IMG/VR virus record: IMGVR_UViG_3300024358_000009
Coordinates: 1 to 64,000 of that record
Reading direction: 5' to 3' (one strand)
Length of the DNA: 64,000 nucleotides
The position numbers and the translations under genes were made by a program. A model generated the notes under the pieces. That model saw only the letters and a list, made by a program, of their open reading frames with translations. It had not been told where the DNA came from and did not search any database. Of this stretch, positions 3,790-55,150 are shown piece by piece. Positions within the stretch are counted from its first letter, which is position 1, and each line of letters starts with the position of its first letter.

Positions 3790-4194
3790 ATGAAGACTGT
3801 AAACTGCTATGACTATTGCACAACTGAAGATAAGAAGTTTATTTGCATGGCTAATGATATGCTTGAACTTCAATCAAGTATGGAGAAAGGCGATTACGAA
3901 TTTGCCTATTCTGTTTTAAGTGGTAACGGATTTGAACAATACAAATCACTTTCTAGCAAAGAAGTTGATGAACAATACGATGCAATCTCGGACTCTATAG
4001 ATTTTGAAGTAGTGATTAGCATTGCAGAAAATCTAAAAGACAATCTAATAACTCCTCTGCTATATCAAGACAGGGCTATGCAATCAATGTTTGAGGATTT
4101 GGTAAACAAACAACCATTTGTAAAATCTGAAAGGCGAATTAAAAACGCAAGGCAAGAAGTTGCTAGAAGGTTTGGCGAGTACGACAACGATTAA
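3790..4194 (+). CDS. hypothetical protein
   Basis: AAGGA RBS; acidic protein. Confidence 0.65.
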   Translation: MKTVNCYDYCTTEDKKFICMANDMLELQSSMEKGDYEFAYSVLSGNGFEQYKSLSSKEVDEQYDAISDSIDFEVVISIAENLKDNLITPLLYQDRAMQSMFEDLVNKQPFVKSERRIKNARQEVARRFGEYDND

Positions 4195-4199
4195 TACAA

Positions 4200-4272
4200 G
4201 GGCTACTAGCTTAAATAGTAAAGCTCCGAACTCATAATTCGGTGAGTGAAAGTGCAAGTCTTTCGTAGCCCA
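4200..4272 (+). tRNA. tRNA with CAU anticodon (elongator Met or Ile2)
   Basis: Acceptor GGGCTAC/GTAGCCC, D stem GCTT/AAGC, anticodon stem CCGAA/TTCGG with loop CTCATAA, T stem GAAAG/CTTTC with loop TGCAAGT, discriminator A, no encoded CCA; G1:C72 pair argues against initiator. Confidence 0.88.
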
Positions 4273-4286
4273 CTAATTTAGAGGCA

Positions 4287-4481
4287 ATGATGATTACTGT
4301 AATAGATTCTTCAAATCAGTATACTCATAACGAATTTAAAAAAGTAATTATCAATCTATCTAATGATGATGGAAAGGAAGATGTTCTTATAACTATACTT
4401 CCAGACGAATGTTCTATTACGATTGAACACTATTCTTCTGGACAGGAAGAACCATACGAAAAAAGAAAAATAAATTGGTAA
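4287..4481 (+). CDS. hypothetical protein
   Basis: GAGG RBS. Confidence 0.55.
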   Translation: MMITVIDSSNQYTHNEFKKVIINLSNDDGKEDVLITILPDECSITIEHYSSGQEEPYEKRKINW

Positions 4482-4495
4482 ACAAAACGAATAAG
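4467..4495 (+). promoter_or_regulatory. repeated promoter motif (AAAA-N16-ACGAATAAG)
   Basis: At gene junction; followed by AATATAG, AAGGAG and ATG 4526. Confidence 0.65.
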
Positions 4496-4525
4496 AATAT
4501 AGACCTGTCAAGAAAAGGAGTTGCT

Positions 4526-4747
4526 ATGGTAGATGTTTTTATTGTTCGATTGAAGAATCGTGACCATTTTACGATGATGTCGAAAATGGACAAGGCAGAC
4601 TTTTGGGATGGCATTCGTCAGTATTCTAAGAAACTAATATTTGACACTAAAGAAGAAGCATTGCGAATTAGCAAGTATCTTGCAGAAAGAACTTGGCTTG
4701 ATTGGGAAGTTTGCAGTGTTCTTGAGTCTAACTATTGGGAGCAATAA
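4526..4747 (+). CDS. hypothetical protein
   Basis: In ORF 4475..4747; ATG 4526 follows AAGGAG. Confidence 0.6.
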   Translation: MVDVFIVRLKNRDHFTMMSKMDKADFWDGIRQYSKKLIFDTKEEALRISKYLAERTWLDWEVCSVLESNYWEQ

Positions 4748-4989
4748 TGATTGACATGGGCGATGGATGGATTGTTACTTTATCAGATAAATCTTTCCTT
4801 AATGATATGGGTATTAAAGAAAGATATGACTGGTGGAATGATATAAAGAAGGTTACTCGTCTTGAGTTTACCGATAAGGCTAGGGCAGAAGAAACTTGTT
4901 CTATGCTAAATAAAAGAACTGGAATGAAGTGGAAGATTGAAAATAGTTTGTTTACTGGCTTTTATCATGAAAAGAGGCAGCGATCATGA
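4747..4989 (+). CDS. hypothetical protein
   Basis: TAATG overlap with previous stop; GGGAG RBS. Confidence 0.6.
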   Translation: MIDMGDGWIVTLSDKSFLNDMGIKERYDWWNDIKKVTRLEFTDKARAEETCSMLNKRTGMKWKIENSLFTGFYHEKRQRS

Positions 4990-5216
4990 AGATAGACCAA
5001 GCAATCAATATGCTTCAAGAAGCAAAAGCTAATGGATCAAAGAATATTATCTTTGCCTTTTGGGAAGCTAATGTCTTTGAAAGAAAGGCTGGCAAGACTT
5101 TTAAAGATAATGAAACATGGGCAAACATAGCTAACTTTATTGATGAGAATATGGATTGGGCTTATGTTCATGAAAGCTTACAGGAAATTATCAGCGAAAA
5201 CTATGTAAAGGATTAG
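4986..5216 (+). CDS. hypothetical protein
   Basis: ATGA coupling. Confidence 0.6.
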   Translation: MKIDQAINMLQEAKANGSKNIIFAFWEANVFERKAGKTFKDNETWANIANFIDENMDWAYVHESLQEIISENYVKD

Positions 5217-5218
5217 CA

Positions 5219-5428
5219 ATGAGCAAAGACGATATACTTCATTATCTAAATGCCAAGAGTGAGTATACTGCAAATGTCAATCTTCGTAATTATACAGATC
5301 AACAATGGTCTATATCATTTGATGAAGATAGTGTAACTATTAGTACGAAAGCTATAAAGAAAAAGCTTAAGTATAATTCTTTTACTAAAAAAGATTTTGA
5401 TGAAATTTTTGAAACATCAAACGAATAA
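5219..5428 (+). CDS. hypothetical protein
   Basis: Packed ORF. Confidence 0.55.
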   Translation: MSKDDILHYLNAKSEYTANVNLRNYTDQQWSISFDEDSVTISTKAIKKKLKYNSFTKKDFDEIFETSNE

Positions 5429-8459: not shown

Positions 8460-9221
8460 ATGAATTTAAAGCATTTTGTAATTACTAGATTTTTAAATCA
8501 AAAAAATATGAGATTTAGAAAGTTTTTATTAGATGAAATCGTTATTGAATACAGAATGAAATTAATGACTAAGTATTTATATCCATCTTTAAATAATCAA
8601 TCAAATTTAAATTTTACACATATAATATTAATACATGAAAAATTACCTAAAAAATATATAGATCAAATTAATAAAATTGATTGCAATTTTAAAAAAATAA
8701 TTATGACTTCAGAACAGTTAAAAGATTTTATAAAAAATGAATATACTAAATGTGATTTTTTAATAACATCCAGAATAGATGATGATGATATGATATATTA
8801 TAATGCAATTGATGATATACAAAAGTCTATCAATGACAATACAATTATAAATGTATATGGTTATAAAAAAGGTTGCACAATGATAGATGGGGAAACTAAA
8901 AAATTTAAATATAAAACAAACATTAATCATGGAATGATAGCTATATTATTAACATTAATAATAAATACAAAAAAAGTAACAAATCCAATAACTATATACG
9001 ATTTAGGAAATCATACCAAAATTAAAGATCAACTGATTAAAAACCATAAGATGTTAGGAATTGATAATTTACCGGATGATTTCTGGAAACCAAATGTTAC
9101 AGTTGATCCAGCTTGGATATACATTAGACATGAAAAATCTGATAGCGGAACAAAACACAGAAGTGATAAAATAGTTAAATTTGGTAAATTTAAAACAAAT
9201 AAATTTTTTGGCTTAGAATAA
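8460..9221 (+). CDS. putative glycosyltransferase (putative rhamnosyltransferase-like, GT-A)
   Basis: HFVITRF, YPSLNNQS, ITSRIDDDD. Confidence 0.7.
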   Translation: MNLKHFVITRFLNQKNMRFRKFLLDEIVIEYRMKLMTKYLYPSLNNQSNLNFTHIILIHEKLPKKYIDQINKIDCNFKKIIMTSEQLKDFIKNEYTKCDFLITSRIDDDDMIYYNAIDDIQKSINDNTIINVYGYKKGCTMIDGETKKFKYKTNINHGMIAILLTLIINTKKVTNPITIYDLGNHTKIKDQLIKNHKMLGIDNLPDDFWKPNVTVDPAWIYIRHEKSDSGTKHRSDKIVKFGKFKTNKFFGLE

Positions 9222-9223
9222 AT

Positions 9224-9856
9224 ATGTACACAGTAATAATACCAACAATGTGGGTTAATGTTACTTTATTAGAAAAAATGATATGTATATATAATCAGTC
9301 TAACTACATCAATGAAATTATAATAATAGACAATAATCCAATCGATAAAATAAAACTTGATTTTAAAAAAGTAAAAATACTTACAAAAAATAAAAATATA
9401 TATGTTAATCCAGCATGGAATTGGGGCGTGTCTGAATCTAACAACGAAAAAATTATAATAGCCAATGATGATATTTTAATAGAAAATTTTGAAAACATAA
9501 TTATAAAAATTGATGAATTTTTAAAAGATAAAATTGTAATAGGTTTAAAAACCAAATTATTAGAAAATGAAAAGCAACAAGTCTCTATAATAAAATGCCA
9601 AAAAAGACCTTATGGATGGGGTACTTTTATGGCTATGAATAAAAAATCATATATTTATGTTCCAGAATATTTAAAAATTTGGGCTGGAGATGATATTCAG
9701 TTTAATAATAATGATCCTTATATAATTTTAGGAGCAGATATAAAAACAAAAATGTCTGAAACTGTAAAAAAATATAATCTTAGAGTTATGGCAAAAAGAG
9801 ATTCTCGTCTTTACAGAACAAAATGTAATCCAGACGGATCTCTTAAACAATTGTAA
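9224..9856 (+). CDS. glycosyltransferase family 2-like
   Basis: TVIIPT, IIIIDN, YVNPAWNWG, IANDDI. Confidence 0.75.
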   Translation: MYTVIIPTMWVNVTLLEKMICIYNQSNYINEIIIIDNNPIDKIKLDFKKVKILTKNKNIYVNPAWNWGVSESNNEKIIIANDDILIENFENIIIKIDEFLKDKIVIGLKTKLLENEKQQVSIIKCQKRPYGWGTFMAMNKKSYIYVPEYLKIWAGDDIQFNNNDPYIILGADIKTKMSETVKKYNLRVMAKRDSRLYRTKCNPDGSLKQL

Positions 9857-9899
9857 CTGCAAATCGAAAAAGTTAATGTAACAACAAAAGGAGTTAATA

Positions 9900-10292
9900 A
9901 TGAATATTAAAATTGATAATGATAACTATATCATGTTTGCAAGTGAATCTGTTAAGAGATGTTTATTGCGTAATAAGATTTCTGCTATTGATCTTTTAAC
10001 TCCATACACGAAAAAGATTTTTAGCAAAAAAGGAAATTGCAGTATTAAAAAGATAGGCGAAGAAAATATAAGCATTACAAATATATCTGTTTATGATTTT
10101 GACGAAGAAAAAATTACTAAGTGTTTTATTTTGCACAGTGTTGGTAATTATACAGAACTCAAGCCTGTTCTTGATAATAAATGGTCTGTAAAATTAGAGT
10201 GTGGACACAACGCCATTATTGATGATACTGTAGATACAATCTGTAAGGATCATAAAGTTAAATGTTTTTTGTGCGAGAAAGCAAATGCTTAA
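9900..10292 (+). CDS. hypothetical Zn-binding protein (WxxKLECGH...CxxC)
   Basis: WSVKLECGH and KCFLC; paralog of 16121..16555. Confidence 0.6.
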   Translation: MNIKIDNDNYIMFASESVKRCLLRNKISAIDLLTPYTKKIFSKKGNCSIKKIGEENISITNISVYDFDEEKITKCFILHSVGNYTELKPVLDNKWSVKLECGHNAIIDDTVDTICKDHKVKCFLCEKANA

Positions 10293-10782
10293 AAGACTTG
10301 TAGACATTGTTTTTATAATAGCTGATTTTTCAATTTGGTTTCTTGGTATTGGATGTTTATTTATACTCAAAGCCACTTATTTAAAAATATGTGACAATGA
10401 CGATTGGAAATTTACTGGAATGATAGGCGTTGGACTTTGTTCTGCTTCAACATTCTTTTCTTTACTAGGTTTATATTTAGCAGAAAAAGAAAGGATTAAG
10501 ACAAAAAAACTAAGCACTATAGATTTTTATTCAATATTTTTTAGATGGTCAGATGCTCCAACATTACAAAAATGGAATTGTGCTAGAGTTAAAGATGGTT
10601 GGGAAATATTCATATATCACAATGGAGAAAGAAAGCGTTTAATGTTTATTGATCATACAGAAGAATATGGCGAAAATTTAGCTAAGTTTATTGTTGAATG
10701 TCCTGTAGATGTAATTAGATTATTAGATTCATATCGTTCTGAATGTGAATGTGAGTATCCAGATGAAAAACAAAGAAAGTGA
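10285..10782 (+). CDS. hypothetical membrane protein
   Basis: Two N-terminal hydrophobic segments. Confidence 0.6.
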   Translation: MLKRLVDIVFIIADFSIWFLGIGCLFILKATYLKICDNDDWKFTGMIGVGLCSASTFFSLLGLYLAEKERIKTKKLSTIDFYSIFFRWSDAPTLQKWNCARVKDGWEIFIYHNGERKRLMFIDHTEEYGENLAKFIVECPVDVIRLLDSYRSECECEYPDEKQRK

Positions 10783-10936
10783 AGTAATAGCTAAACTTCT
10801 AGCTGCTTGCAAACGAGCTTTTGATTTTGTAGATGATGAGTTCAATAATAAGACTGTTGTAGAAATGAATGGATCATTCGGATTGTGGCTCGATTTAAAA
10901 CAAGCGATAGATTTTGCTGAAAAAAATAAAACATGA
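10745..10936 (+). CDS. hypothetical protein
   Basis: Packed ORF; start uncertain. Confidence 0.5.
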   Translation: MNVSIQMKNKESEVIAKLLAACKRAFDFVDDEFNNKTVVEMNGSFGLWLDLKQAIDFAEKNKT

Positions 10937-12460: not shown

Positions 12461-12752
12461 AAGGCTAGAATCTTTAAATGTCTCTAAAATATATATAACA
12501 TTCTTTTGCGAAAAAGATAAAATAGATATTATAAGCAATATAGTTATTATGACAGATGGAAGATATTCTGTTGATTGGAATGATGATATTTATAAAGACA
12601 AATCTTATATAACAGAACCAATTTTTCATTATGATAAAAAAGATTGGATTAATATAGATGGTCTATTAACTTGGGATGTTGTTAATAAAAAATTAATTAT
12701 TTCTGGCGAAAAAGAAAAATGTCTAAAAGAGAAGTTCTCCGAAGAAATATAA
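12438..12752 (+). CDS. hypothetical protein
   Basis: Packed ORF; GGAG upstream. Confidence 0.55.
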   Translation: MTKNEIFKRLESLNVSKIYITFFCEKDKIDIISNIVIMTDGRYSVDWNDDIYKDKSYITEPIFHYDKKDWINIDGLLTWDVVNKKLIISGEKEKCLKEKFSEEI

Positions 12753-12881
12753 TGGCGTATTTATATACGCTATGGAAATAAACATAATTGATAATGCTAG
12801 GCCGTATATTGAATTATTTTTTTGGTTTCTTATATATAATTTGATAATCTTTACTATGAAAGAAGTTTTGAAAGATTCTGA

Positions 12882-12910
12882 TTAATTTTTTGACGATTGT
12901 GACGAATAAG
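12882..12910 (+). promoter_or_regulatory. repeated promoter motif (TTAA-N16-ACGAATAAG)
   Basis: In 180-bp intergenic gap; followed by AAGGAGG. Confidence 0.7.
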
Positions 12911-12936
12911 ATGATATACAACTCAAGGAGGTAAGT

Positions 12937-13170
12937 ATGATTAGTTTTTTCAAAAAGTTTTTTGTTAAGTCTGAAGATCAATTGAAAGTTTTAGAACTTC
13001 AAAATGAAATAAGTTCATTAAAAAGAATAGTTCAAGATTTAGAAATTGAAAATTCTGATTTTGAAATAGCAAAATTTAATCTTATTGATGAAAATAAGGA
13101 ACTAGAAAGACAGATTAGAGAACTAAATAAAAAGATAGATTCTATAAAAATTATACTGGAATATAAATGA
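12937..13170 (+). CDS. coiled-coil hypothetical protein
   Basis: AAGGAGG RBS; heptad pattern. Confidence 0.65.
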   Translation: MISFFKKFFVKSEDQLKVLELQNEISSLKRIVQDLEIENSDFEIAKFNLIDENKELERQIRELNKKIDSIKIILEYK

Positions 13171-13175
13171 TAAAA

Positions 13176-13244
13176 GGGCGGTATTGCAATTTTCATAGTT
13201 CGGTGGGATGAAGTTGCATTTTTGGCTTGTTGTCAAAACCGCCC
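13176..13244 (+). other. predicted three-way-junction RNA structure upstream of csrA-like gene
   Basis: GGGCGGT/ACCGCCC closing stem; TGCAATTTTCAT/ATGAAGTTGCA and TTTGGC/GTCAAA inner stems. Confidence 0.5.
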
Positions 13245-13263
13245 CTCTTATTTTGGAGATGAA

Positions 13264-13464
13264 ATGGAAAACGGAAATTTAGTTTTTACTAGGAATTTTG
13301 GCGAATCTTTTACTGTTTATACGCCAAATGGAAATGTAGTAATAACACTATTATCAAATAAATTTAGTACTAATCAGGTTAAAGTATCTGTTAGTGCTCC
13401 TAAAAACTTTAAGATAATGAGAAATGAGATAATTAATACCACAAGAGACAAAAGCCATGAATAG
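13264..13464 (+). CDS. csrA: carbon storage regulator CsrA/RsmA family RNA-binding protein
   Basis: LVFTRNFGESFTV...QVKVSVSAPKNFKIMRNEI matches LVLTRK.GESI.I...QVRIGI.APK...I.R.E; GGAG RBS. Confidence 0.8.
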   Translation: MENGNLVFTRNFGESFTVYTPNGNVVITLLSNKFSTNQVKVSVSAPKNFKIMRNEIINTTRDKSHE

Positions 13465-14737
13465 AAGACATTTTTTACAGCATACTACTGAGTTTGCTTC
13501 TCTTGCACTATTATCAAATCTTCATGCTCAGCAAGAAACAATAAAGAAAAAGGGCAAAAGATTAATAGTTCTTTGGATGAGCGGTGGCCCAAGTCATATG
13601 GACTTGTGGGATCTAAAGCAGGGAGAATCTACTGGTGGAGATTTTAAGCCAATCAACACTTCGGCAAACGGAGTGCAGATTAGTGAAGTTCTTCCAACGA
13701 TTGCTTCACAATTCCACAACTTGGTGGCTATTCGATCTTTGGTTACTAATGAAGGTAGCCATGAGCGTGGCACATACTTAATGAATACGGCTAAACAGCC
13801 TAATCCAGTAGTACAGTATCCAGCTATGGGTGCTGTAGTTTCTTCTTTGATTGGTTCTAAAGAGTTAGCTTTACCAAACTTTATAGGGATTGGTGGTACT
13901 GCTCAAAGAGTTGGCCCAGGTTTTCTTGGAGCTATGTACACACCATTTGTTGTGCAGAATCCTGGTGTTCCACCAGAAAACATTAAAGCACCAGCATCGC
14001 TTGGAGATGACGATGAAAGACTACGCAGAAGACAAAGATTGTTCTATGGAATAGAAGATGAATTTGCCCAAAAAGTAATGCCTCATATTAAAAAGGCTAA
14101 AGATAGAGAAAATTTAGGCAATGTGGCTGAATCTCACTCGTCTATTTATGGTAAAGCCTTTGATCTTACCATATCGCCACTTAGGACAGTATTTGAGATT
14201 AAAAACGAAAACACCGCCACTATTGAAGCTTATGGCGGTAGAATGAACCAATTTGGCATGGGATGCCTTCTTGCTAGAAAACTTGTCGAGAAGGGAGTTA
14301 GTTGTGTTCAAGTCGATCTCGGCGGATGGGATAATCATAATAATATCTTTTCTACTATTAGGAATGGTAATGGCCCTCGGCTTGATAAAGGTTTTGGAAA
14401 CTTGGTAAAAGAACTTAATGATATTGGTTTATGGAAAGATACAGTAGTTCTTTGGATGGGCGAATTTGGTCGTACTCCTAAGATTAATCAAAATGGTGGG
14501 CGTGACCATTGGGCTAGATGTTGGTCTGTTGTCGTTGGCGGTGGTGCAATTAAGGGCGGTCAAGCGTATGGATCAACAAGTAAAGATGGGTTAGATATTA
14601 AAGATAAGCCATGTACCATTGGCGATATTTACGCAACTGTTTATAAAGCTTTAGACATGGATCTTTCTGCTCAAATTAGAGATAACATCGGAAGACCTAT
14701 GAATATTGCAGAAGGAAAACCTTTAGATATTTTTTAA
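13457..14737 (+). CDS. DUF1501 domain protein with Tat signal
   Basis: MNRRHFL; LWMSGGPSHMDLWDLK; GGWDNH; GEFGRTPKIN...GRDHW. Confidence 0.9.
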   Translation: MNRRHFLQHTTEFASLALLSNLHAQQETIKKKGKRLIVLWMSGGPSHMDLWDLKQGESTGGDFKPINTSANGVQISEVLPTIASQFHNLVAIRSLVTNEGSHERGTYLMNTAKQPNPVVQYPAMGAVVSSLIGSKELALPNFIGIGGTAQRVGPGFLGAMYTPFVVQNPGVPPENIKAPASLGDDDERLRRRQRLFYGIEDEFAQKVMPHIKKAKDRENLGNVAESHSSIYGKAFDLTISPLRTVFEIKNENTATIEAYGGRMNQFGMGCLLARKLVEKGVSCVQVDLGGWDNHNNIFSTIRNGNGPRLDKGFGNLVKELNDIGLWKDTVVLWMGEFGRTPKINQNGGRDHWARCWSVVVGGGAIKGGQAYGSTSKDGLDIKDKPCTIGDIYATVYKALDMDLSAQIRDNIGRPMNIAEGKPLDIF

Positions 14738-14748
14738 AAGGAGTTTTT

Positions 14749-14910
14749 GTGCTTAAAAAATACGCAGGAAAAGTAAAATGTTTGGGATGGTGCAATAAAG
14801 AATTTATATCTCCAAACAAAGTTTATGTTCGTTTGTGTCATGAGTGTAAAGAGAAAAGCAATAATCTCAGAGCAAGAAGAAATTCTAAATATCTAGAAGT
14901 TAAAGATTGA
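14749..14910 (+). CDS. small Zn-finger protein (53 aa)
   Basis: GTG start after AAGGAG; KCLGWCNKEFISP...LCHEC; paralog of 28157..28339. Confidence 0.65.
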   Translation: MLKKYAGKVKCLGWCNKEFISPNKVYVRLCHECKEKSNNLRARRNSKYLEVKD

Positions 14911-14932
14911 TAAAATAATTTAAATTGTTATG

Positions 14933-14961
14933 TTAAGTTTTCGTCAGCGTTGACGAATAAG
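14933..14961 (+). promoter_or_regulatory. repeated promoter motif (TTAA-N16-ACGAATAAG)
   Basis: Intergenic; overlaps inverted repeat CGTCA-N4-TGACG. Confidence 0.7.
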
Positions 14962-14969
14962 TGAGTAGG

Positions 14970-15000
14970 AAGTTGGTGTGTTGCCAACTTAGTTTTTGTT
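14970..15000 (+). promoter_or_regulatory. leader hairpin with T-tract (attenuator- or terminator-like)
   Basis: AAGTTGG/CCAACTT stem then AGTTTTTGTT, between promoter motif and RBS. Confidence 0.45.
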
Positions 15001-15014
15001 GAAGGAGGATAGTT

Positions 15015-15254
15015 ATGTTGAGTTTCATTATGGCGATTGCCATTGCTACCAGTTCTGAATCTGTGGACGGAATCAGACTGCGTGGTGGTTCTTCTTGTTC
15101 TAATGGTTCATGCAGTGTTGCTGCTGCACCAGTAGCAGAGAAGAAAGTTGAAGCTCCAGCAAAGCAGGAAGCAGTAGCTACTTGCGGATCTGGAAACTGC
15201 GGAAGTGCTAAATCTCATCATAGATTTGGTATTATTCGTGGTCGATGCCGTTAA
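15015..15254 (+). CDS. small secreted Cys/Gly-rich protein
   Basis: AAGGAGG RBS; signal-like MLSFIMAIAIA; CSNGSC and CGSGNC motifs; basic C-terminus. Confidence 0.7.
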   Translation: MLSFIMAIAIATSSESVDGIRLRGGSSCSNGSCSVAAAPVAEKKVEAPAKQEAVATCGSGNCGSAKSHHRFGIIRGRCR

Positions 15255-15267
15255 TAATGCGGTATAT

Positions 15268-15302
15268 AAAGAAGGGGGGCTTTATGCTCCCCTTTTCTTT
15301 TT
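15268..15302 (+). terminator. intrinsic terminator
   Basis: AAGAAGGGGGGC / GCTCCCCTTTTCTT stem with T-run. Confidence 0.7.
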
Positions 15303-15317
15303 GAGGTTAATATCAAA

Positions 15318-15557
15318 ATGAAATTTTGTCAGTCATGTGATTGTGAACTACCAGATTATTTAGAATCAGAAATAGATCTTTGTTTTAGCTGTATGTTTAA
15401 TAACTCAAATTGTTGCGAAGTCTGTAGTGAAGTTATTAATATAAATGATATAGATAAAGCAAATTTCATGCTTGGTGATGACTGGATTGAAATGTGCGAT
15501 AAATGTGCGAAAGAATTTTATGAGAATAGGAAGACTAACGATATTAGAAGAAGTTGA
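15318..15557 (+). CDS. Cys-rich (Zn-finger) hypothetical protein
   Basis: Four CxxC pairs. Confidence 0.6.
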   Translation: MKFCQSCDCELPDYLESEIDLCFSCMFNNSNCCEVCSEVININDIDKANFMLGDDWIEMCDKCAKEFYENRKTNDIRRS

Positions 15558-15876
15558 ACCAAAAGTAATGCCTTCTGGTCAAATCTGTAAAAGAGTCAAG
15601 GTTAAATGCGATTGCGGTAAAGAAAAAATTGTTTATTTAAATAATATACATAACGGAAGAACTATTAGTTGCGGGTGTTTTAAAAAAGACTTTATAATAA
15701 AATGGAATAAGCAAGATTTAGACACAAATCTTTTAATAGAATATAAAAATGAAATAATGACATTGGCTGAATTTTGCAGAAGAACTAATTTAGATTATAG
15801 TTTTGCTAGAAATAGATATATAATGGGATGGGAGCCAGAAGATATTGTAAACAAACCAAAAAGACATAAAAAATGA
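15520..15876 (+). CDS. HNH-associated DNA-binding module protein, nuclease core apparently absent
   Basis: GRLTIL...KCDCG...G.TISCGC N-module and EYKNEIMTLAEF...RNR...GW C-module; no HNH core between them. Confidence 0.55.
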   Translation: MRIGRLTILEEVEPKVMPSGQICKRVKVKCDCGKEKIVYLNNIHNGRTISCGCFKKDFIIKWNKQDLDTNLLIEYKNEIMTLAEFCRRTNLDYSFARNRYIMGWEPEDIVNKPKRHKK

Positions 15877-16124
15877 CAACTGAGTTATTGTTTTTTAATG
15901 TTTGGCTTGAATACATAGGTGCTGATAAGAAAAAAAAGAGAAAGCTCGTTTTTAAAACAAACGATTTTAATGAAGCTGCCACAAAATTAATAACGAATGA
16001 ATATTTAAAAGAATATCTTTTTATGCCAAAATGCGTTGTAATACTTGAAGACACATTTGGTAATGATTTGAGAACAAAACCAGTTTTTAAAAATGACAAA
16101 TTCTTTTTATTACCAGAAAAATGA
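15873..16124 (+). CDS. hypothetical protein
   Basis: ATGA coupling. Confidence 0.55.
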   Translation: MTTELLFFNVWLEYIGADKKKKRKLVFKTNDFNEAATKLITNEYLKEYLFMPKCVVILEDTFGNDLRTKPVFKNDKFFLLPEK

Positions 16125-16555
16125 AAAAAGTATTTTTTACATACAATGATGAGAAATATTATATAATTGCTGGGAAAACAGCAAAAAAACAAAAAGATTT
16201 ACTTCGGTGCGGATGGAAAACACTACTCAGTGTTTTATGTAGAGAATCATTTCCAAATATAGAAAAAGTAACAGAAAAAACAAACAATAATCATATAATA
16301 ACAGTTCCAAATTTTGAAGAATTAGTTTTTTTTGTTATAAATCTAAAGATAGATGGTAAAAAAGTATTTGTAGTTACATCTAATGAAAAAGTATTATCTA
16401 TAAAAATGAAAAAATTTGGTAAATGGATTGCCAAATTAGAATGTGGTCATGTTTTTTTAATGGATAGCTCTGTAGATGATTATAGGTTTGTAAAAAGAGT
16501 ATTTTGTCCAACATGCATGGAGCAAACAGATGATTCAATTTTTGAACAACCTTAA
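16121..16555 (+). CDS. hypothetical Zn-binding protein (WxxKLECGH...CxxC)
   Basis: WIAKLECGH and FCPTC; paralog of 9900..10292. Confidence 0.6.
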   Translation: MKKVFFTYNDEKYYIIAGKTAKKQKDLLRCGWKTLLSVLCRESFPNIEKVTEKTNNNHIITVPNFEELVFFVINLKIDGKKVFVVTSNEKVLSIKMKKFGKWIAKLECGHVFLMDSSVDDYRFVKRVFCPTCMEQTDDSIFEQP

Positions 16556-17105
16556 AAAATTCTTAGAAAATAAAGATAGTTGCTGTGAGTTAAATCCAGT
16601 ATTAAATATTAACAACGAAAGAGTTGTTTTTATAACATCTAACAATTATTTAATTTCAAAGTATTTTTTTAATATAGTTAAAACTTATGCCATAGAACAA
16701 GATATGGATATACTAGAAAATTCAAAAAATTTTATGAGTATGGAAAAGTCATTAGATAATTTAATGGCACTAATAAAAGAGTCATGCAATAACAATAAAA
16801 AACATATAATTATGTTGAACAACTTTGATGTTTTTTTTGATGACGAGACTTGTTTGGGTGTTGCAAAAGAACTTATTGACTATATTAAAAATCCATCTGA
16901 TGATTTTTGTGGTATAGTTTTTTTAACGAATAGGTCAAAATCAATAGAACCATTTTTAATGGAATCTCCTTCTCATTTAAAAATCAATCAAGTTTGGTGT
17001 CTTGGTGAATATGTTTGTCGCAAAATCGAAGAAAAGAGTATGGAGAAGTTATTGGCTGAGTCAATTGATGCTGTTAATAAAACTCTTGCTTGTAAATATT
17101 TTTAA
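16530..17105 (+). CDS. hypothetical protein, possibly degenerate AAA+ fold
   Basis: IIMLNNFDVFF Walker-B-like and IVFLTN sensor-1-like; no Walker A. Confidence 0.35.
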   Translation: MIQFLNNLKKFLENKDSCCELNPVLNINNERVVFITSNNYLISKYFFNIVKTYAIEQDMDILENSKNFMSMEKSLDNLMALIKESCNNNKKHIIMLNNFDVFFDDETCLGVAKELIDYIKNPSDDFCGIVFLTNRSKSIEPFLMESPSHLKINQVWCLGEYVCRKIEEKSMEKLLAESIDAVNKTLACKYF

Positions 17106-19867: not shown

Positions 19868-20383
19868 TTATTCTCCTGACCATATTTTTTCTTCTGGGCC
19901 TAATAATCTAGCTAAAGTAAATAAAAAATCGCTTAATCTATTTATGTATATAACAATGTTTTTAAGATATTGGTGAACTTCCATTAATTTAACTAAATCA
20001 ATTTCAACCCTACGACATACTGCTCTAGCAAGATGAATTTCGCAATGATTAAATGGTATAATAAAATTTTTAAGTGGCTTTAAATGTTTTGTCATCTCAT
20101 CAATTTTTTGCTCAAGTTGTTTAATGTGATCTTCTTTAATTCTTTCTTTTCCGGTAGCTATTTCAGCACCTATATCAAATAAATGTTTCTGTGTTTCAAC
20201 AATAAAATCGTAAATGTTTTGAACTTTAAGTTCTAATATATATCTTTGATTTACAAGACCTATTGAAGCATTAAGCTCATCCACGCTTCCAAGAAGTTGA
20301 ATATGTGGATCGGTTTTTGGAACACGCCCAACTTTTGGCAAAAGAGTTGTTCCATCATCTCCAGTTTTAGTATAAACCTTCAT
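19868..20383 (-). CDS. pduO: ATP:cob(I)alamin adenosyltransferase, PduO/MMAB type
   Basis: KVYTKTGDDGTT, GSVDELNASIG, LFDIGAEIA, HLARAVCRRVE, YINRLSDFLFTLAR. Confidence 0.92.
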   Translation of the reverse strand: MKVYTKTGDDGTTLLPKVGRVPKTDPHIQLLGSVDELNASIGLVNQRYILELKVQNIYDFIVETQKHLFDIGAEIATGKERIKEDHIKQLEQKIDEMTKHLKPLKNFIIPFNHCEIHLARAVCRRVEIDLVKLMEVHQYLKNIVIYINRLSDFLFTLARLLGPEEKIWSGE

Positions 20384-22806: not shown

Positions 22807-23280
22807 ATGAATATTTTTGCATTAGATTTAAACACCAAACAAGCTGCTGAATGGCATGTAGATAAACATGTAGTCAAAATGCCATTAGAAAGTGCCCAAA
22901 TGCTTTGTACAGTTCTTAATCAACTTGGAGTTAAAACACCATATAAATCAGCTTATGCAAAACATCCATGCACTATTTGGGCAGGAGAAAGCATGGATAA
23001 TTTTATTTGGTTATGTGAACTTGGATTAGAACTTTGTAAAGAGTATACTTATCGTTATGAAAAAGAACATAAGTGTGAAGCTATTATTAAAGAGTGTTTA
23101 ACATATTCTTGTAAAGTTCCAAATAAAGGACTTACAAAATTTGCTCAAGCTATGCCAGAAGAATTAAAAAAAGACAATCCAATAGATGGTTATAGAGAAT
23201 ATTACATAAGGTGTAAATATCATATAGCATCTTGGAAAAAAAGAAATATTCCTTTTTGGTTTATAAAATATGAAACTTAA
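22807..23280 (+). CDS. pyrimidine dimer DNA glycosylase / DenV family protein
   Basis: MNIFALD...HVDKHVVKMPLESAQML, HPCTIW, YREYY. Confidence 0.85.
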   Translation: MNIFALDLNTKQAAEWHVDKHVVKMPLESAQMLCTVLNQLGVKTPYKSAYAKHPCTIWAGESMDNFIWLCELGLELCKEYTYRYEKEHKCEAIIKECLTYSCKVPNKGLTKFAQAMPEELKKDNPIDGYREYYIRCKYHIASWKKRNIPFWFIKYET

Positions 23281-23866
23281 CATCGTTACTGTTCTATGGA
23301 GAAAAAACTATATATTAGAACAGTATAAAACAATACCTAAAAAACCAGACATTAATTGGATTTTATGTAAAACAAATTTGTGGGGAAAGATACCAAATCA
23401 AATTTTATTTAATACAGAATTAAATACAATTGTTTTAGAAACTAAAATTAAAACTAAAAATAAAACAGAGCATATAACAGATTTTGTTTTAAAAATTAAC
23501 CATGGATTAAAAAATGTAGAACATGGTTTTTTTTATATTTTAGATGATGATAATTCATTTAATAATGAAATTTATAATGTATTTAATGAATATAAAAATT
23601 CTAATTATAAAATGATAATAGGAAATCAAATAAGAAATAAAAGAGGAAAAATTCTTTCGGCTCAATATCCAAAGCATGGATGTATAGATATGGGAAATGT
23701 TATTTGTTCAACAGATATTTTTAATAAAGTAGATTATTTTAATAACATAAACAAAAAAAATCGTTTATATGATTGGCAATTTTGGTTAGAATGTTTTAAT
23801 TCTATATCAAAAGATGATGTTTTGCTTTTACATAAAAATATTTTTAATTATAATGGATTAAGATAA
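23270..23866 (+). CDS. glycosyltransferase family 2-like
   Basis: FYILDDDN, IDMGN, DWQF. Confidence 0.6.
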   Translation: MKLNIVTVLWRKNYILEQYKTIPKKPDINWILCKTNLWGKIPNQILFNTELNTIVLETKIKTKNKTEHITDFVLKINHGLKNVEHGFFYILDDDNSFNNEIYNVFNEYKNSNYKMIIGNQIRNKRGKILSAQYPKHGCIDMGNVICSTDIFNKVDYFNNINKKNRLYDWQFWLECFNSISKDDVLLLHKNIFNYNGLR

Positions 23867-24516
23867 TGTCAGCTATAGGTGCTCACAAAATAACTGAAGA
23901 TTTTGAAAAAAAACTATGTGATTATACTGGTTCTCCATACGCAGTTGCTCTTGATAATATGAGCAATGCTTTATTTTTATCTCTTTATTTTGAAAAAAAT
24001 ATAAAAAAATCAATAAAAGAAGATTATATAATTATTCCATCAAGAACATATCCTTCTGTTCCTTGTGAAATAATTCATGCTGGACTTAAAGTTAAATTTG
24101 AAAATACTAATGAAAAAATGTTAAAAGGTGCTTACCAATTAAAAAATTCTAATGTTTGGGATTCGGCATTAAGATTTACAGCTGATATGTATATACCTAA
24201 TTCTTATATGTGCATATCTTTTACTGGTCCATATAAAATATTAAAATTAAGTAAGGGTGGTGCTATTTTAACAGATGATATAGAAGCTGTTAAATGGTTT
24301 AAAAGGGCTAGGTTTAGCGGAAGAAGAGAATGTTCTTATCATGAAGATAATTTTGATATGCTTGGTTGGAATTTTTATATGATGCCAGAATTAGCAGCAA
24401 GAGGATTATTACTTATGTCTGGCTTTTATAATAGTGATAATACAAAAAAACATATTGAAGATTTAGAATTGCCGTATCCAGATTTAAGCAATTTTAAAAT
24501 ATATAGCGAAAAATAA
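23866..24516 (+). CDS. DegT/DnrJ/EryC1/StrS PLP-dependent aminotransferase-like (short form)
   Basis: FEKKLC.YTG..YAVA..N.SNAL.LSL, WDSA, SFT..YKIL..SKGGAILTDD, GWNFYM. Confidence 0.8.
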   Translation: MSAIGAHKITEDFEKKLCDYTGSPYAVALDNMSNALFLSLYFEKNIKKSIKEDYIIIPSRTYPSVPCEIIHAGLKVKFENTNEKMLKGAYQLKNSNVWDSALRFTADMYIPNSYMCISFTGPYKILKLSKGGAILTDDIEAVKWFKRARFSGRRECSYHEDNFDMLGWNFYMMPELAARGLLLMSGFYNSDNTKKHIEDLELPYPDLSNFKIYSEK

Positions 24517-24517
24517 A

Positions 24518-27086: not shown

Positions 27087-27089
27087 CAT

Positions 27090-54223: not shown

Positions 54224-54468
54224 AAAAGAAAGAAGACTTATTGGAAGAAATCAAAGCACTGGAAGAAATGCTTGAGTCAAAAGATGTAATAATAAAAGAA
54301 TCAATTAATATTATGAAAGCTTTGGTTTTCAAATTTGGCGGTAAAGTTCTGTTAAAACCTGAGTTTATTCAAGCAGCAAAAAGTAAGGATAATTATGTAG
54401 ATATAAAATATGACGAATCTGGGCGTTTGAAACTTGAAGTTAAAGAAGTAGATGAATTAAGAAAGTAG
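54220..54468 (+). CDS. hypothetical protein between dnaE halves
   Basis: ATGA coupling, GGAG RBS. Confidence 0.65.
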   Translation: MKKKEDLLEEIKALEEMLESKDVIIKESINIMKALVFKFGGKVLLKPEFIQAAKSKDNYVDIKYDESGRLKLEVKEVDELRK

Positions 54469-54475
54469 GAACATT

Positions 54476-55141: not shown

Positions 55142-55150
55142 AGGATATTT

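What the first reader, a model, noticed from the sequence alone, without database searches (positions are those of the whole stretch)
13457..14737. Intact Tat-exported DUF1501 protein in a phage-like genome
Seen: a full-length 426-aa DUF1501 protein with twin-arginine signal. Established: the family is greatly expanded in Planctomycetota, has unknown function, and often sits beside DUF1549/DUF1553 genes; no such partner is in this window. Inference: a host-derived periplasmic enzyme kept as an auxiliary gene. This would be unusual viral cargo and a clue to the family's function.
Basis: partly seen in the sequence, partly recalled or inferred. Interest (0 to 1): 0.75.

Follow-up and report, generated by a model that had tools for sequence, protein, structure and literature searches.

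The report
Phage-borne Tat-exported DUF1501 enzyme gene
A large freshwater phage carries an intact, strongly conserved copy of a secreted enzyme gene (DUF1501) that it took from planctomycete bacteria (Gemmataceae). Many other uncultured large phages carry the same enzyme family, often with its usual partner gene, so this looks like an undescribed class of host-derived phage gene whose biochemical role is still unknown.

Summary
Window 13457-14737 (+) is an intact 426-aa DUF1501 protein (Pfam 311 bits) with a twin-arginine N-terminus. It sits in a real tailed phage that has a terminase, portal, tail fibre and a DnaE/DnaB/primase module.

The gene is host-derived. The phage copies form one clade nested in Gemmataceae, next to low-GC freshwater genomes (70-72% aa). 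It is the only stretch of the phage's first 20 kb with DNA similarity to 151 Gemmataceae genomes.

It is not decaying:
- dN/dS is 0.06-0.13.
- All family-invariant residues are kept.
- GC3 has shifted to phage values.
- All 29 closely related viral loci are intact.

Only one atypical, partner-unlinked paralog out of about 100 per host genome was captured. A second phage lineage captured the same subfamily independently. A CsrA-like gene overlaps its start in every subclade.

The AlphaFold model (pLDDT 94) has an alkaline-phosphatase-superfamily core. It lacks the formylglycine motif and has a conserved His at the usual nucleophile position.

IMG/VR holds at least 121 viral DUF1501 stretches in about nine groups, and five groups carry an adjacent DUF1549/DUF1553 partner. 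None is in 50,697 deposited phage genomes, PHROGs or the searchable literature.

Function remains inferred. The record itself is two ~80%-identical genomes joined end to end.

The parts
13457..14737 (+). DUF1501 coding sequence (426 aa), Tat-signal-bearing alkaline-phosphatase-superfamily protein
   Evidence: ORF. Pfam PF07394 at 311 bits. AF2 model pLDDT 93.6, pTM 0.90. Structural matches only to the AP superfamily. dN/dS 0.062 against the second copy in the record.
13457..13531 (+). Predicted twin-arginine signal peptide (residues 1-25: MNRRHFLQ..., h-region, LHA|QQ)
   Evidence: Read from the translation. RR is 96% conserved in the family. MNRRHF is conserved in all viral copies, with a 5-residue shorter h-region than in cellular orthologs. 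Residues 1-31 are a low-pLDDT helix before strand 35-41. Export has not been tested.
13264..13464 (+). CsrA-like regulator gene (66 aa from ATG 13264; the mechanical ORF starts at TTG 13222). Its stop overlaps the DUF1501 start (ATGAATAG).
   Evidence: Pfam CsrA PF02599 at 36 bits (cut-off 27). phrog_9500 'CsrA-like regulator'. Below the NCBIfam equivalog cut-offs. The sequence shows GGAG upstream of ATG 13264 and the 8-nt overlap. It lies immediately upstream of DUF1501 in all phage subclades while other flanking genes are shuffled.
14749..14910 (+). Small 53-aa CxxC...CxxC (zinc-ribbon-like) ORF directly after DUF1501, preceded by AAAGGAG
   Evidence: Sequence and translation. Conservation was not examined. 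Listed only as a possible member of the same transcription unit.
14970..14990 (+). Terminator-like hairpin followed by a T-run, downstream of the csrA-like/DUF1501/small-ORF block
   Evidence: Consensus scan: 7 terminator-like sites found against 1.6 expected in shuffles. This is a pattern match only.

Best explanation
The gene is a functional, host-derived auxiliary gene of a clade of ~150-kb, ~30% GC tailed phages. Their probable hosts are freshwater, low-GC Gemmataceae (Planctomycetota).

An ancestor of this phage clade captured one particular DUF1501 paralog from a Gemmataceae genome. That paralog is the atypical, compact, single-copy one, which in Gemmataceae is not linked to its DUF1549/DUF1553 partner. 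The gene has since been inherited vertically under strong purifying selection while its synonymous sites drifted to phage composition.

The product is made in the infected cell, probably co-translated with an upstream CsrA-like regulator. It is exported folded through the host Tat pathway to the periplasm. There it acts as a metal-dependent enzyme of the alkaline-phosphatase superfamily, most likely a hydrolase of phospho- or sulfo-ester substrates. It has a conserved His (H102) where the superfamily's nucleophile normally sits. It lacks a partner of its own and probably works with the host's unlinked, membrane-anchored DUF1549/DUF1553 protein, which carries a CxxCH-type motif. In this way it would supplement or replace the host ortholog while host gene expression is shut down.

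Shown: the gene's integrity, family, fold, viral setting, origin, selection and recurrence in phages. Inferred: Tat export, catalytic activity, substrate class, cooperation with the host partner, the benefit to the phage and the host identity.
For: Viral setting:
- Terminase, portal, tail fibre and replication genes are present; the record is an IMG/VR virus contig.
- The gene lies in colinear phage context on 26 loci from many samples.

Origin:
- The 14 distinct phage sequences form one clade (100/100).
- That clade is sister to 10 low-GC freshwater Gemmataceae sequences (99/92).
- A tree that keeps the Gemmatales cellular sequences together without the phage clade is rejected (AU p=0.014).
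- Only 13540-14722 of the first 20 kb matches 151 Gemmataceae genomes, at up to 70% nt identity and E=1e-122.

Maintenance:
- dN/dS is 0.062 between the record's two genome copies and 0.09-0.13 within the sister subclade.
- Amino-acid identity is 91% against a median of 74%; omega ranks 7th lowest of 78 ortholog pairs.
- 81 of 87 columns that are >=97% conserved in cellular orthologs are unchanged in all viral copies.
- All family-invariant polar residues are kept in 70 viral sequences.
- GC3 is 0.27, against 0.20+-0.08 for the phage and 0.46-0.83 for hosts.

Specific paralog:
- Host genomes have about 86-101 DUF1501 matches, the 150 listed scoring 448-546 bits. The phage type scores 311 bits and is shorter.
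- A second phage lineage took the same subfamily independently (AU p=5e-46; viral genes).

Fold and active site:
- AF2 model pLDDT 93.6.
- VIA-align Z is 16-18 to NPP phosphodiesterases, PafA alkaline phosphatases and S1 sulfatases.
- The family profile hits only AP-superfamily chains in the PDB.
- hhalign to host sulfatases gives 91% probability and aligns E336-F to the sulfatase D-N metal motif.
- H102 has the same -9 spacing to the 'T-G' as the sulfatase nucleophile Cys.

Partner:
- Pirellulales and Isosphaerales orthologs have a PSCyt2+PSD1 gene directly upstream.
- Gemmataceae have one stand-out partner-like gene with no DUF1501 in the 1.5 kb fetched on each side. It is conserved across the family.

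Expression:
- At least 24 riverine metatranscriptome runs hold the stretch.
- One contig covering 12815-15723 has 5-fold the depth of its flanks in run X1, and a similar block has 2-fold in X2.
Against: - No biochemical function is known for any DUF1501, and Swiss-Prot has no characterised close relative. The substrate class is therefore a guess.
- Fold similarity does not separate phosphoesterase from sulfatase or transferase branches.
- I could not read model coordinates, so clustering of the conserved residues into one metal site is not verified.
- The Tat signal rests on a motif only (one search gave no separate hit), and the phage h-region is short.
- Host assignment rests on this one gene. 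Another host-like gene (PduO) gave no host signal. No spacer-like matches were found in the first 20 kb. Co-occurrence in runs is inconclusive. Phage GC (~30%) is well below even the low-GC candidates (42-44%).
- The metatranscriptome signal comes from contig mean depths in RNA libraries that may contain DNA.
- An invariant cellular Pro (P55) is replaced in all copies of both partner-less phage lineages. This could mean an altered rather than identical function.
Confidence: 0.6

Rival explanations
1. Envelope remodelling rather than nutrient metabolism. The exported enzyme modifies or strips a periplasmic or surface molecule, for example a phospho- or sulfo-substituted glycan or lipid. It could act as a transferase in the manner of LtaS or EptA. 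The effect would be to block superinfection, mask the receptor, or aid release.
For: - The fold is equally close to LtaS/LtaP and the GPI-ethanolamine-phosphate transferase catalytic domains.
- The phage carries several glycosyltransferases.
- P55 is replaced in parallel in both partner-less phage lineages, which suggests a virus-specific tweak.
- The gene sits among small early-type genes next to a post-transcriptional regulator.
Against: - The protein has no membrane domain, unlike LtaS or EptA.
- 81 of 87 cellular-invariant positions are unchanged, which argues for the same activity as the conserved host housekeeping ortholog.
- Other phages carry the complete cellular-type two-gene module.
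Confidence: 0.17
2. Redox module. DUF1501 and its CxxCH-motif partner form a periplasmic electron-transfer enzyme, as Kamneva et al. 2012 proposed for the PSCyt/PSD1/DUF1501 system. The phage would then keep an energy-related reaction running during infection.
For: - The partner has an invariant C-x-Q-C-H-D/N-H-P motif in viral and cellular versions.
- In Poribacteria a cytochrome-c-domain protein follows the ortholog.
- Tat export is typical of cofactor-bearing redox enzymes, and the literature proposes electron transport (PMC3542564).
Against: - The DUF1501 fold is a hydrolase/transferase superfamily with no known redox members among the matches.
- The partner model matches no solved cytochrome or any other solved fold.
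- This phage lacks the partner entirely.
Confidence: 0.13
3. Decoy or antagonist. The phage copy is catalytically irrelevant. It titrates the host's partner protein or clogs a host pathway as part of takeover.
For: - The phage takes only the enzyme half although the subfamily belongs to a two-protein module.
- An otherwise invariant residue (P55) is changed in all partner-less viral copies.
Against: - Every conserved putative catalytic or metal residue is retained in all 70 viral sequences.
- dN/dS of 0.06 across the whole length is more constraint than a binding decoy usually needs.
Confidence: 0.05
4. Artefact. The contig is cellular or chimeric at this point, or the gene is a recent passenger on its way to decay.
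For: - The record is a chimeric join of two related genomes.
- The gene's GC (39.5%) exceeds that of its flanks (~29-30%).
Against: - The join is at ~149.3 kb, about 136 kb from the gene. It coincides with the start of independent contigs of the second type.
- The same gene in the same phage context occurs on 26 loci from many samples, all intact.
- Third-codon GC is at phage level.
- Purifying selection is strong.
- Flanking DNA has no similarity to Gemmataceae.
Confidence: 0.02

Closest known systems
Cellular DUF1501 (PF07394) proteins of Planctomycetota, specifically the single-copy 435-438-aa ortholog of freshwater Gemmataceae (e.g. loci L040-L051)
   Same: 70-72% amino-acid identity over the full length. 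Same twin-arginine N-terminus. All conserved residues are shared. Same fold family: ESM Atlas TM 0.87 to a planctomycete DUF1501 cluster. As in the Gemmataceae donors, no partner gene is adjacent.
   Different: Encoded by a phage. About 10 residues shorter, mostly in the signal peptide's h-region. GC3 of 0.27 against 0.46-0.83. P55, S35 and R323, invariant in cells, are replaced. Coupled to a CsrA-like gene instead of lying divergent from a glycerate-kinase gene.
The PSCyt2(DUF1549)/PSD1(DUF1553) + DUF1501 gene module of the PVC superphylum (Kamneva et al. 2012, PMC3542564)
   Same: The phage protein belongs to a subfamily whose Pirellulales and Isosphaerales orthologs have the partner directly upstream. 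Other phages carry the full pair.
   Different: This phage lineage, like its Gemmataceae donors, has the enzyme only. The partner is absent from the whole record. The typical module paralogs are longer (~470-500 aa) and score 450-545 bits against the Pfam model, compared with 311 here.
Alkaline-phosphatase-superfamily enzymes: NPP phosphodiesterases (Xac NPP 2gsn), PafA-type alkaline phosphatases, S1 formylglycine sulfatases
   Same: The catalytic core fold is shared: Z 16-18, about 240-280 residues aligned at 3.2-4.5 A. Foldseek probability 1.0. hhalign 91% to sulfatases. Conserved Asp/His/Glu lie after the same core strands.
   Different: Only 9-14% identity and TM about 0.4. No C/S-x-P-x-R formylglycine motif and no D-D at the end of strand 1. 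A conserved His (H102) lies at the nucleophile position. No member of DUF1501 has a known activity.
Phage auxiliary genes for periplasmic nutrient acquisition (cyanophage pstS/phoA-type genes; comparison from general knowledge, not tested here)
   Same: A host-derived gene for an exported protein, kept under selection in a lytic-type large phage of nutrient-poor waters. This is inference.
   Different: No link of DUF1501 to phosphate or sulfate acquisition has been demonstrated. No Pho-type regulatory context was examined. The family is not in PHROGs or in 50,697 deposited phage genomes.
UniProt A0A6J5M742, 'DUF1501 domain-containing protein [uncultured Caudovirales phage]' (BFVD)
   Same: A DUF1501 protein already deposited from an uncultured tailed phage. 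It is the best viral structural match (E=5.6e-10).
   Different: Only 16% identity, 489 aa and TM 0.37, so it belongs to a different DUF1501 subfamily. I found no publication discussing it.

Membership tests
DUF1501 (Pfam PF07394) | Match to the family HMM above the gathering threshold over nearly the full model | tested here: met
   311.2 bits against a cut-off of 27, model positions 2-384 of 390. The score is lower than for typical host paralogs (448-546 bits), so this is a divergent subfamily.
DUF1501 (Pfam PF07394) | Family-invariant residues (GGxS46, D52, K54, H102, W-D292-x-H294, D310, E336-F-G-R339, G-R-D350-H351) | tested here: met
   All are present in the window protein and in all 70 viral sequences examined.
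DUF1501 (Pfam PF07394) | Adjacent DUF1549/DUF1553 (PSCyt2/PSD1) partner gene (frequent, not obligatory) | tested here: not met
   No PF07583 or PF07587 match anywhere in the record, and 0 of 26 loci of this phage group have one. The Gemmataceae donor orthologs also lack an adjacent partner. Kamneva et al. note unassociated DUF1501 genes, so this does not exclude membership.
Tat (twin-arginine) export substrate | N-terminal S/T-R-R-x-F-L-K-like motif, moderately hydrophobic h-region, A-x-A-type cleavage site | tested here: met
   The N-terminus is M-N-R-R-H-F-L-Q...FASLALLSNL-H-A|Q-Q. RR is 96% conserved. The motif is present in nearly all viral DUF1501. No dedicated predictor was available, and NCBIfam gave no hit.
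Tat (twin-arginine) export substrate | Tat-dependent translocation of the folded protein | not testable with these tools
   This needs a reporter fusion or fractionation experiment.
Phage auxiliary (host-derived) gene | Located inside a bona fide viral genome, flanked by viral genes on both sides | tested here: met
   Terminase, portal and tail fibre; replication genes; conserved phage synteny on independent contigs; flanks unlike Gemmataceae DNA.
Phage auxiliary (host-derived) gene | Phylogenetic nesting within a cellular clade | tested here: met
   Supports of 100/100 and 99/92; AU p=0.014 against exclusion from Gemmatales.
Phage auxiliary (host-derived) gene | Maintained by purifying selection in the virus | tested here: met
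   dN/dS 0.06-0.13. 7th lowest of 78 ortholog pairs.
Phage auxiliary (host-derived) gene | Expressed during infection | tested here: inconclusive
   The stretch is held by at least 24 metatranscriptome runs. Contig depth over 12815-15723 is 5-fold that of its flanks in one run. These are contig mean depths, and DNA carry-over is not excluded.
Phage auxiliary (host-derived) gene | Defined metabolic reaction | not testable with these tools
   No DUF1501 has a known activity.
Alkaline-phosphatase superfamily (fold level) | Core alpha/beta fold shared with AP, NPP and sulfatases | tested here: met
   Foldseek probability 1.0 with only AP-superfamily hits. VIA-align Z 16-18. Profile hits and hhalign agree.
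S1 formylglycine-dependent sulfatases | C/S-x-P-x-R motif giving the formylglycine nucleophile, and D-D-x-G at the end of strand 1 | tested here: not met
   The query has no such motif, whereas 11 of 14 host sulfatases have C-x-[PA]-x-R-x4-[TS]-G. The query has G-G-P-S-H in place of D-D-L-G. It is not filed as a sulfatase.
NPP / alkaline phosphatase (two-metal Ser/Thr nucleophile enzymes) | Ser/Thr nucleophile at the N-terminus of the helix after the second core strand, plus six Asp/His metal ligands | tested here: inconclusive
   His102 sits at the nucleophile position. Candidate ligands D49/D52, D292, H294, E336, D350 and H351 are conserved. Their geometry could not be checked because no coordinates were accessible.
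CsrA family (the upstream gene) | Match to the CsrA HMM | tested here: met
   Pfam 36 bits against a cut-off of 27; phrog_9500. It falls below the NCBIfam equivalog cut-offs (34 against 73 bits), so it is a divergent CsrA-like protein and not an equivalog.

The most novel reading that the evidence does not exclude
The DUF1501 enzyme, with or without its DUF1549/DUF1553 partner, is a widespread and so far undescribed class of auxiliary gene in large aquatic phages, captured repeatedly and independently. That complete phage genomes carry just the two-gene pair would mean the pair is a self-sufficient periplasmic system. With about 100 paralogs per planctomycete genome, it would resemble a substrate-capture-plus-esterase system for organic phosphorus or sulfur. 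The enzyme would be a new catalytic variant of the alkaline-phosphatase superfamily, with His at the nucleophile position. The phage copies would then offer a minimal, tractable entry point to a function that has been open since the first planctomycete genomes.
Probability: 0.25. Interest if true: 0.75.

Novelty: new member of a known kind. Interest (0 to 1): 0.6.

Why it matters
DUF1501 and its DUF1549/DUF1553 partners are among the most expanded protein families in Planctomycetota and Verrucomicrobiota. The genomes examined here carry about 90-100 copies each. No activity has been assigned to them since they were first noticed (PMC3542564).

These results narrow the problem in three ways:
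- Phages repeatedly keep these genes under strong selection.
- Some complete large phage genomes keep exactly the two-gene pair.
- One specific, partner-unlinked paralog was taken twice.

Together these indicate that the enzyme is useful on the time-scale of an infection. They also suggest the pair is a functional unit, and they single out one compact ortholog as the best candidate for biochemistry.

The gene also gives a rare host handle for a widespread group of ~150-kb freshwater phages, since phages of planctomycetes are barely known.

In practical terms, it flags an IMG/VR record that is called 100% complete but is actually two related genomes joined.

Tried and rejected
In the meantime I used a profile-vs-PDB search, the ESM Atlas and hhalign against host sulfatase and NPP sets. 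The NPP comparison was uninformative (probability 0.7%).
- A single-sequence PDB search gave only noise.
- NCBIfam gave no hit for the protein.
- tblastn of four viral DUF1501 groups against INPHARED gave nothing, apart from one weak partial hit in a 6.9-kb human-gut 'Bacteriophage sp.' record.
- For host evidence beyond the gene itself:
  - PduO adenosyltransferase homologs are mixed-phylum at <=49% identity.
  - CsrA-like hits in host genomes are weak (28 bits).
  - The host locus occurs in freshwater metagenomes but only in trace shares in riverine RNA runs, with no run shared with the phage list.
  - A DNA search of 151 Gemmataceae genomes found no spacer-like matches in the first 20 kb; the remaining ~130 kb was not searched.
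- PHROGs recognised none of six candidate structural proteins in the 70-99 kb region or the 480-aa ORF at 126.5-127.9 kb, so the major capsid is unidentified.
- The partner's AF2 model has no relative among solved structures, so it gave no functional clue beyond the CxxCH-type motif.
- I considered and rejected three readings: the gene as a formylglycine sulfatase (motif absent), a chimeric insertion and a decaying passenger.
- dS is saturated between phage and cellular copies, so selection on the transfer branch could not be estimated.
Full report
**1. Observation**

It matches Pfam DUF1501 (PF07394) at E=1.5e-92 and 311 bits, over positions 2-384 of the 390-position model.

The N-terminus reads MNRRHFLQ, followed by a short hydrophobic stretch and LHA|QQ. 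This fits the twin-arginine consensus, and the RR pair is 96% conserved in a 135-sequence family alignment. No PHROG family matches, and NCBIfam has no model that hits it.

**2. The contig is viral, but it is not one genome**

The window is bases 1-64000 of a 206,326-bp IMG/VR record. Evidence that it is a tailed phage:
- The window holds a split DnaE, DnaB helicase, primase, a class-II-like RNR, RecA/UvsX, nucleases and glycosyltransferases.
- The rest of the record holds a large terminase, a portal and a collagen-like tail fibre.
- Coding density is 94.5% and GC is 31.7%.

A self-comparison shows that 149,670-206,319 is colinear with 283-58,947 at only 74-83% nucleotide identity. Bases 1-143 recur at 149,318-149,461 at 96.5%. 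The record is therefore a ~149.3-kb genome (A) followed head-to-tail by 57 kb of a related genome (B).

Independent B-type IMG/VR contigs begin exactly at the junction-equivalent position. Their gene starts at contig base 13,996, which equals 163,313-149,318+1. The join therefore lies at a genome terminus.

A 221-kb IMG/VR contig has the same layout.

The join is about 136 kb from the gene. It is useful here because it supplies a natural ortholog pair.

**3. The gene is conserved in a phage clade**

A search of IMG/VR with the protein found 29 loci:
- identical copies;
- copies at 91-92% identity (B type);
- a second subclade at 70-73%, on contigs up to 142 kb;
- a separate group at 43%.

All copies are intact at 414-426 aa and begin MNRRHF/MNRRNF. 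Flanking DNA is 27-39% GC and the gene is 37-40% GC. The loci at 70% identity or more share many phage genes with the window, although gene order around the locus is shuffled.

**4. Origin**

The closest cellular proteins (70-72% identity, 435-438 aa) come from freshwater Gemmataceae and Gemmatales MAGs from Baikal, Mendota, Zurich, Erken and elsewhere. Several of these MAGs have unusually low GC, 42-44%.

Phylogenetic results:
- In a maximum-likelihood tree of 86 sequences, the 14 distinct phage sequences form one clade (UFBoot/SH-aLRT 100/100).
- That clade is sister to ten low-GC freshwater Gemmataceae sequences (99/92), deep inside Gemmatales.
- A tree that keeps the Gemmatales cellular sequences together without the phage clade is rejected (delta lnL 66, AU p=0.014).
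- A single origin for all viral copies is rejected (p=5e-46). The 43% group, which sits in a Pirellulales-type clade, is therefore a second, independent capture. Its contig carries phage-type genes: UvdE, ATP-dependent DNA ligase and phrog_1362.

Against 151 Gemmataceae genomes, the only part of the phage's first 20 kb with DNA similarity is 13,540-14,722. Identity reaches 70% and E reaches 1e-122, apart from one weak 74-nt hit elsewhere. The gene is a discrete island of Gemmataceae-derived sequence.

**5. The gene is not decaying**

- Between genomes A and B, dN=0.058 and dS=0.93, giving omega 0.062. Within the other subclade omega is 0.09-0.13.
- Among 78 A/B ortholog pairs the gene ranks 7th lowest in omega. 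Its amino-acid identity is 91% against a median of 74%. This puts it on a par with DnaE and DnaB.
- GC3 is 0.27. The phage's own genes average 0.20+-0.08, the nearest cellular orthologs are 0.46-0.58 and typical Gemmataceae are 0.83. GC at codon positions 1 and 2 stays high. Synonymous sites have ameliorated, which implies long residence in the phage.
- Of 87 alignment columns that are >=97% conserved in 70 cellular orthologs, 81 are unchanged in every viral copy.

**6. Which paralog was captured**

The candidate host genomes (4.2-8.8 Mb) each contain about 86-101 DUF1501 matches. The 150 listed score 448-546 bits with open frames of 455-593 aa. The phage-type subfamily scores 311 bits and is 426-438 aa, so it is an atypical, compact member.

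Its genomic context differs by lineage:
- In Gemmataceae it lies divergent from a glycerate-kinase gene, near genes for a PEP-mutase/ICL-family enzyme, DinG and SppA. No DUF1549/DUF1553 gene is adjacent.
- In Pirellulales and Isosphaerales, the same subfamily has a PSCyt2(DUF1549)+PSD1(DUF1553) gene directly upstream in 14 of about 18 loci.
- In Poribacteria, a WD40 protein and a cytochrome-c-domain protein follow it.

Gemmataceae genomes each hold one stand-out homolog of that partner (296-321 bits, against <=221 for the rest). No DUF1501 lies in the 1.5 kb fetched on each side, whereas the next-best hits do have one adjacent.

This orphan partner (616 aa) has a membrane anchor, a charged linker and a CAQCHDHPF motif. 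It is conserved across Gemmataceae at 54-91% identity.

The phage encodes no partner.

**7. Phage-specific features**

- A CsrA-like gene lies immediately upstream. It matches Pfam CsrA at 36 bits and phrog_9500. Its probable start is ATG 13264, giving 66 aa.
- Its stop overlaps the DUF1501 start codon (ATGAATAG).
- This adjacency holds in every subclade of the clade, although other neighbours change.
- A 53-aa CxxC...CxxC ORF and a terminator-like hairpin follow the gene.
- P55 (in WDLKP) is Pro in 69 of 70 cellular orthologs. It is replaced in all 16 sequences of both partner-less phage lineages.
- Across other viral groups P55 is also depleted: 16 of 54, against 103 of 126 in family representatives. 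I have no explanation for this.

**8. Fold and active site**

The AlphaFold2 model built on the 135-sequence alignment is confident: pLDDT 93.6, pTM 0.90.

Structural comparisons:
- Foldseek against the PDB returns only alkaline-phosphatase-superfamily enzymes: S1 sulfatases, LtaS/LtaP, alkaline phosphatase and phosphonate monoester hydrolase. Probability is 1.0 but TM is only about 0.4, at 9-13% identity.
- VIA-align gives Z=18.2 to Xanthomonas NPP (239 residues at 3.3 A), about 18 to ENPP6/7/3, 17.5 to PafA and 17.4 to choline sulfatase.
- The family profile hits only this superfamily in the PDB, best at E=8e-5.
- hhalign against sulfatases from the host genomes gives 91% probability. It aligns D310 and the G-E336-F-G-R motif with the sulfatase Asp and S-D-N-G metal motif.

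Active-site reading:
- There is no C/S-x-P-x-R formylglycine motif.
- The end of strand 1 reads G-G-P-S-H instead of D-D-x-G.
- H102 (98% conserved) sits at the N-terminus of the helix after strand 89-95. Its spacing to the conserved T-G is the same -9 as that of the sulfatase nucleophile Cys.

The protein is a divergent member of the superfamily, with conserved candidate metal ligands (D49/D52, D292, H294, E336, D350, H351) and an unusual His at the nucleophile position. I could not read coordinates, so the geometry is inferred. Swiss-Prot has no characterised close relative.

**9. How common this is in viruses**

- A family-level scan of IMG/VR found 121 DUF1501-encoding stretches. Among the 83 loci examined there are nine groups at >=55% identity.
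- Nearly all are compact (398-445 aa), carry a twin-arginine N-terminus and sit in 24-45% GC contexts.
- In five groups (38 loci) a PSCyt2+PSD1 gene lies within 4 kb, usually abutting the DUF1501 start. One group has two DUF1501 genes in tandem.
- Four whole records carrying the pair are 171-225 kb. Two have direct terminal repeats, and all four have a large terminase at E about 1e-52.
- All family-invariant residues are kept in all 70 viral sequences.
- The ESM Atlas has a 79-member DUF1501 cluster that is 60% viral.
- BFVD's best match is a UniProt 'DUF1501 domain-containing protein [uncultured Caudovirales phage]'.
- In contrast, four viral DUF1501 groups find nothing in 50,697 deposited phage genomes.
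- The searchable literature has no report of a phage DUF1501. One paper lists a weak CDD hit on a 61-aa phage protein.

**10. Expression**

At least 24 riverine metatranscriptome runs hold 12,900-15,300 nearly in full.

- In run X1, one contig spanning 12,815-15,723 has mean depth 42, against 7-8 for its flanks.
- In run X2, a block spanning 12,741-16,693 has depth 16, against 7.
- The left breakpoints fall in the intergenic gap 12,752-12,937.

This is compatible with a transcription unit that includes the csrA-like gene and DUF1501. However, these are contig mean depths in libraries that may contain DNA, so it is not proof.

**11. Interpretation**

The most likely mechanism is that the phage supplies a Tat-exported alkaline-phosphatase-superfamily enzyme. 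This enzyme would supplement the host's own single-copy ortholog in the periplasm, probably working with the host's unlinked DUF1549/DUF1553 protein.

The substrate class is unknown; phospho- or sulfo-esters are the default for this fold. Envelope remodelling, a redox role with the CxxCH partner, and a decoy role remain open at lower probability. The artefact reading is excluded.

The partner's model (pLDDT 83) has no solved structural relative, so it adds no functional clue beyond its invariant C-x-Q-C-H-D/N-H-P motif.

**12. Host**

Freshwater low-GC Gemmataceae are the probable hosts, but this rests on one gene. Other lines gave no support:
- PduO gave no host signal.
- No spacer-like matches were seen in the first 20 kb.
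- Run co-occurrence is inconclusive.

**13. Verdict**

This is a real, intact, selected phage gene of known family and unknown function. It is a new member of the known kind 'host-derived auxiliary gene'. Beyond the single gene, DUF1501, often together with its partner, is a recurrent and undescribed cargo of large aquatic phages.

Noticed in passing
whole record G000: 1-149,317 vs 149,318-206,326 (window 1-58,947 is the part repeated): The 206-kb IMG/VR record, called linear and 100% complete, is a ~149.3-kb genome followed head-to-tail by 57 kb of a second genome that is 74-83% identical in DNA. A 221-kb IMG/VR contig has the same layout. Independent contigs of the second type begin exactly at the junction. 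It looks like two co-occurring strains joined at a shared terminus during assembly.
   Followed up: partly
window 13264-13464 (+): A divergent CsrA-like gene overlaps the DUF1501 start. It is the only neighbour conserved in all subclades of this phage group. It has no equivalent next to the cellular orthologs. Its targets are unknown.
   Followed up: partly
residue 55 of the protein (window 13619-13621): Pro55 (WDLKP) is present in 69 of 70 cellular orthologs. It is replaced in every copy of two independently derived, partner-less phage lineages (Q/T/G/E and S), and it is depleted in other viral DUF1501 groups. This is a parallel change and is unexplained.
   Followed up: partly
IMG/VR loci L193, L204, L212, L214, L223, L226, L188 (partner ORFs e.g. 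L214:2254-3993 next to DUF1501 L214:3995-5197); L179:2667-4004 plus 4001-5245: Other large phages (171-225 kb, two with direct terminal repeats, all four with a terminase) carry a DUF1549+DUF1553 gene abutting a Tat-signal DUF1501 gene. One group has two DUF1501 genes in tandem. Their hosts and donors were not determined.
   Followed up: partly
window 52310-56776 (+): DnaE (Pol III alpha) is split into two ORFs, PHP+NTPase at 52310-54223 and finger+HhH at 55151-56776. A small ORF (54220-54468) and a DnaQ/RNase T-like exonuclease (54476-55141) lie between them. In genome B my ORF set shows no one-to-one partner for the second half: there are two ORFs (201161-202108 and 202136-203065) in the corresponding region.
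   Followed up: no
window 19868-20383 (-), 39032-41320 (+), 41331-42353 (+): The phage carries a PduO-type cobalamin adenosyltransferase, a ribonucleotide reductase (strong PHROG match) with weak, below-cut-off Pfam hits to B12-dependent-type RNR domains, and an adjacent radical-SAM/SPASM protein. The adenosyltransferase is old phage cargo: its nearest cellular homologs are <=49% identical and of mixed phyla.
   Followed up: partly
window 23270-27638: A block of six ORFs, including an ATP-grasp protein (25815-27086), has no counterpart in genome B. It is a strain-variable island. Smaller A-only ORFs lie at 8460-10936.
   Followed up: no
window 2013-3529 (+): A C5 cytosine DNA methyltransferase and a second methyltransferase sit near the left end in genome A. 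In genome B they lie directly upstream of the csrA-like/DUF1501 block; in the second subclade they lie close upstream or downstream of it. This is a local rearrangement.
   Followed up: no
record G000 79663-91593, 99586-107529, 113553-120305 (all -), outside the window: Three giant ORFs of 3976, 2647 and 2250 aa lie in the structural region. The last contains ~80-88% identical internal repeats around 117.05-118.82 kb. None of six other candidate structural ORFs in 70-99 kb, nor one at 126.5-127.9 kb, matched PHROGs, and the major capsid is unidentified.
   Followed up: no
window 14749-14910 (+) and 4200-4273 (+): A 53-aa CxxC...CxxC ORF with a strong Shine-Dalgarno sequence follows directly after DUF1501. 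A tRNA-Met gene lies near the left end.
   Followed up: no
window 12741-16693 in RNA runs X1, X2, X4, X6: The whole stretch is assembled at 99-100% identity in many riverine metatranscriptome runs from 2018. The IMG/VR records of this phage may themselves derive from RNA libraries. Contig depth steps of 2-5-fold occur at gene-block boundaries.
   Followed up: partly
host locus L124:1225-3075 and alignment A2: DUF1549/DUF1553 partner proteins, viral and cellular, share an invariant C-x-Q-C-H-D/N-H-P motif. Their confident AlphaFold model (pTM 0.82) has no detectable relative among solved structures.
   Followed up: partly
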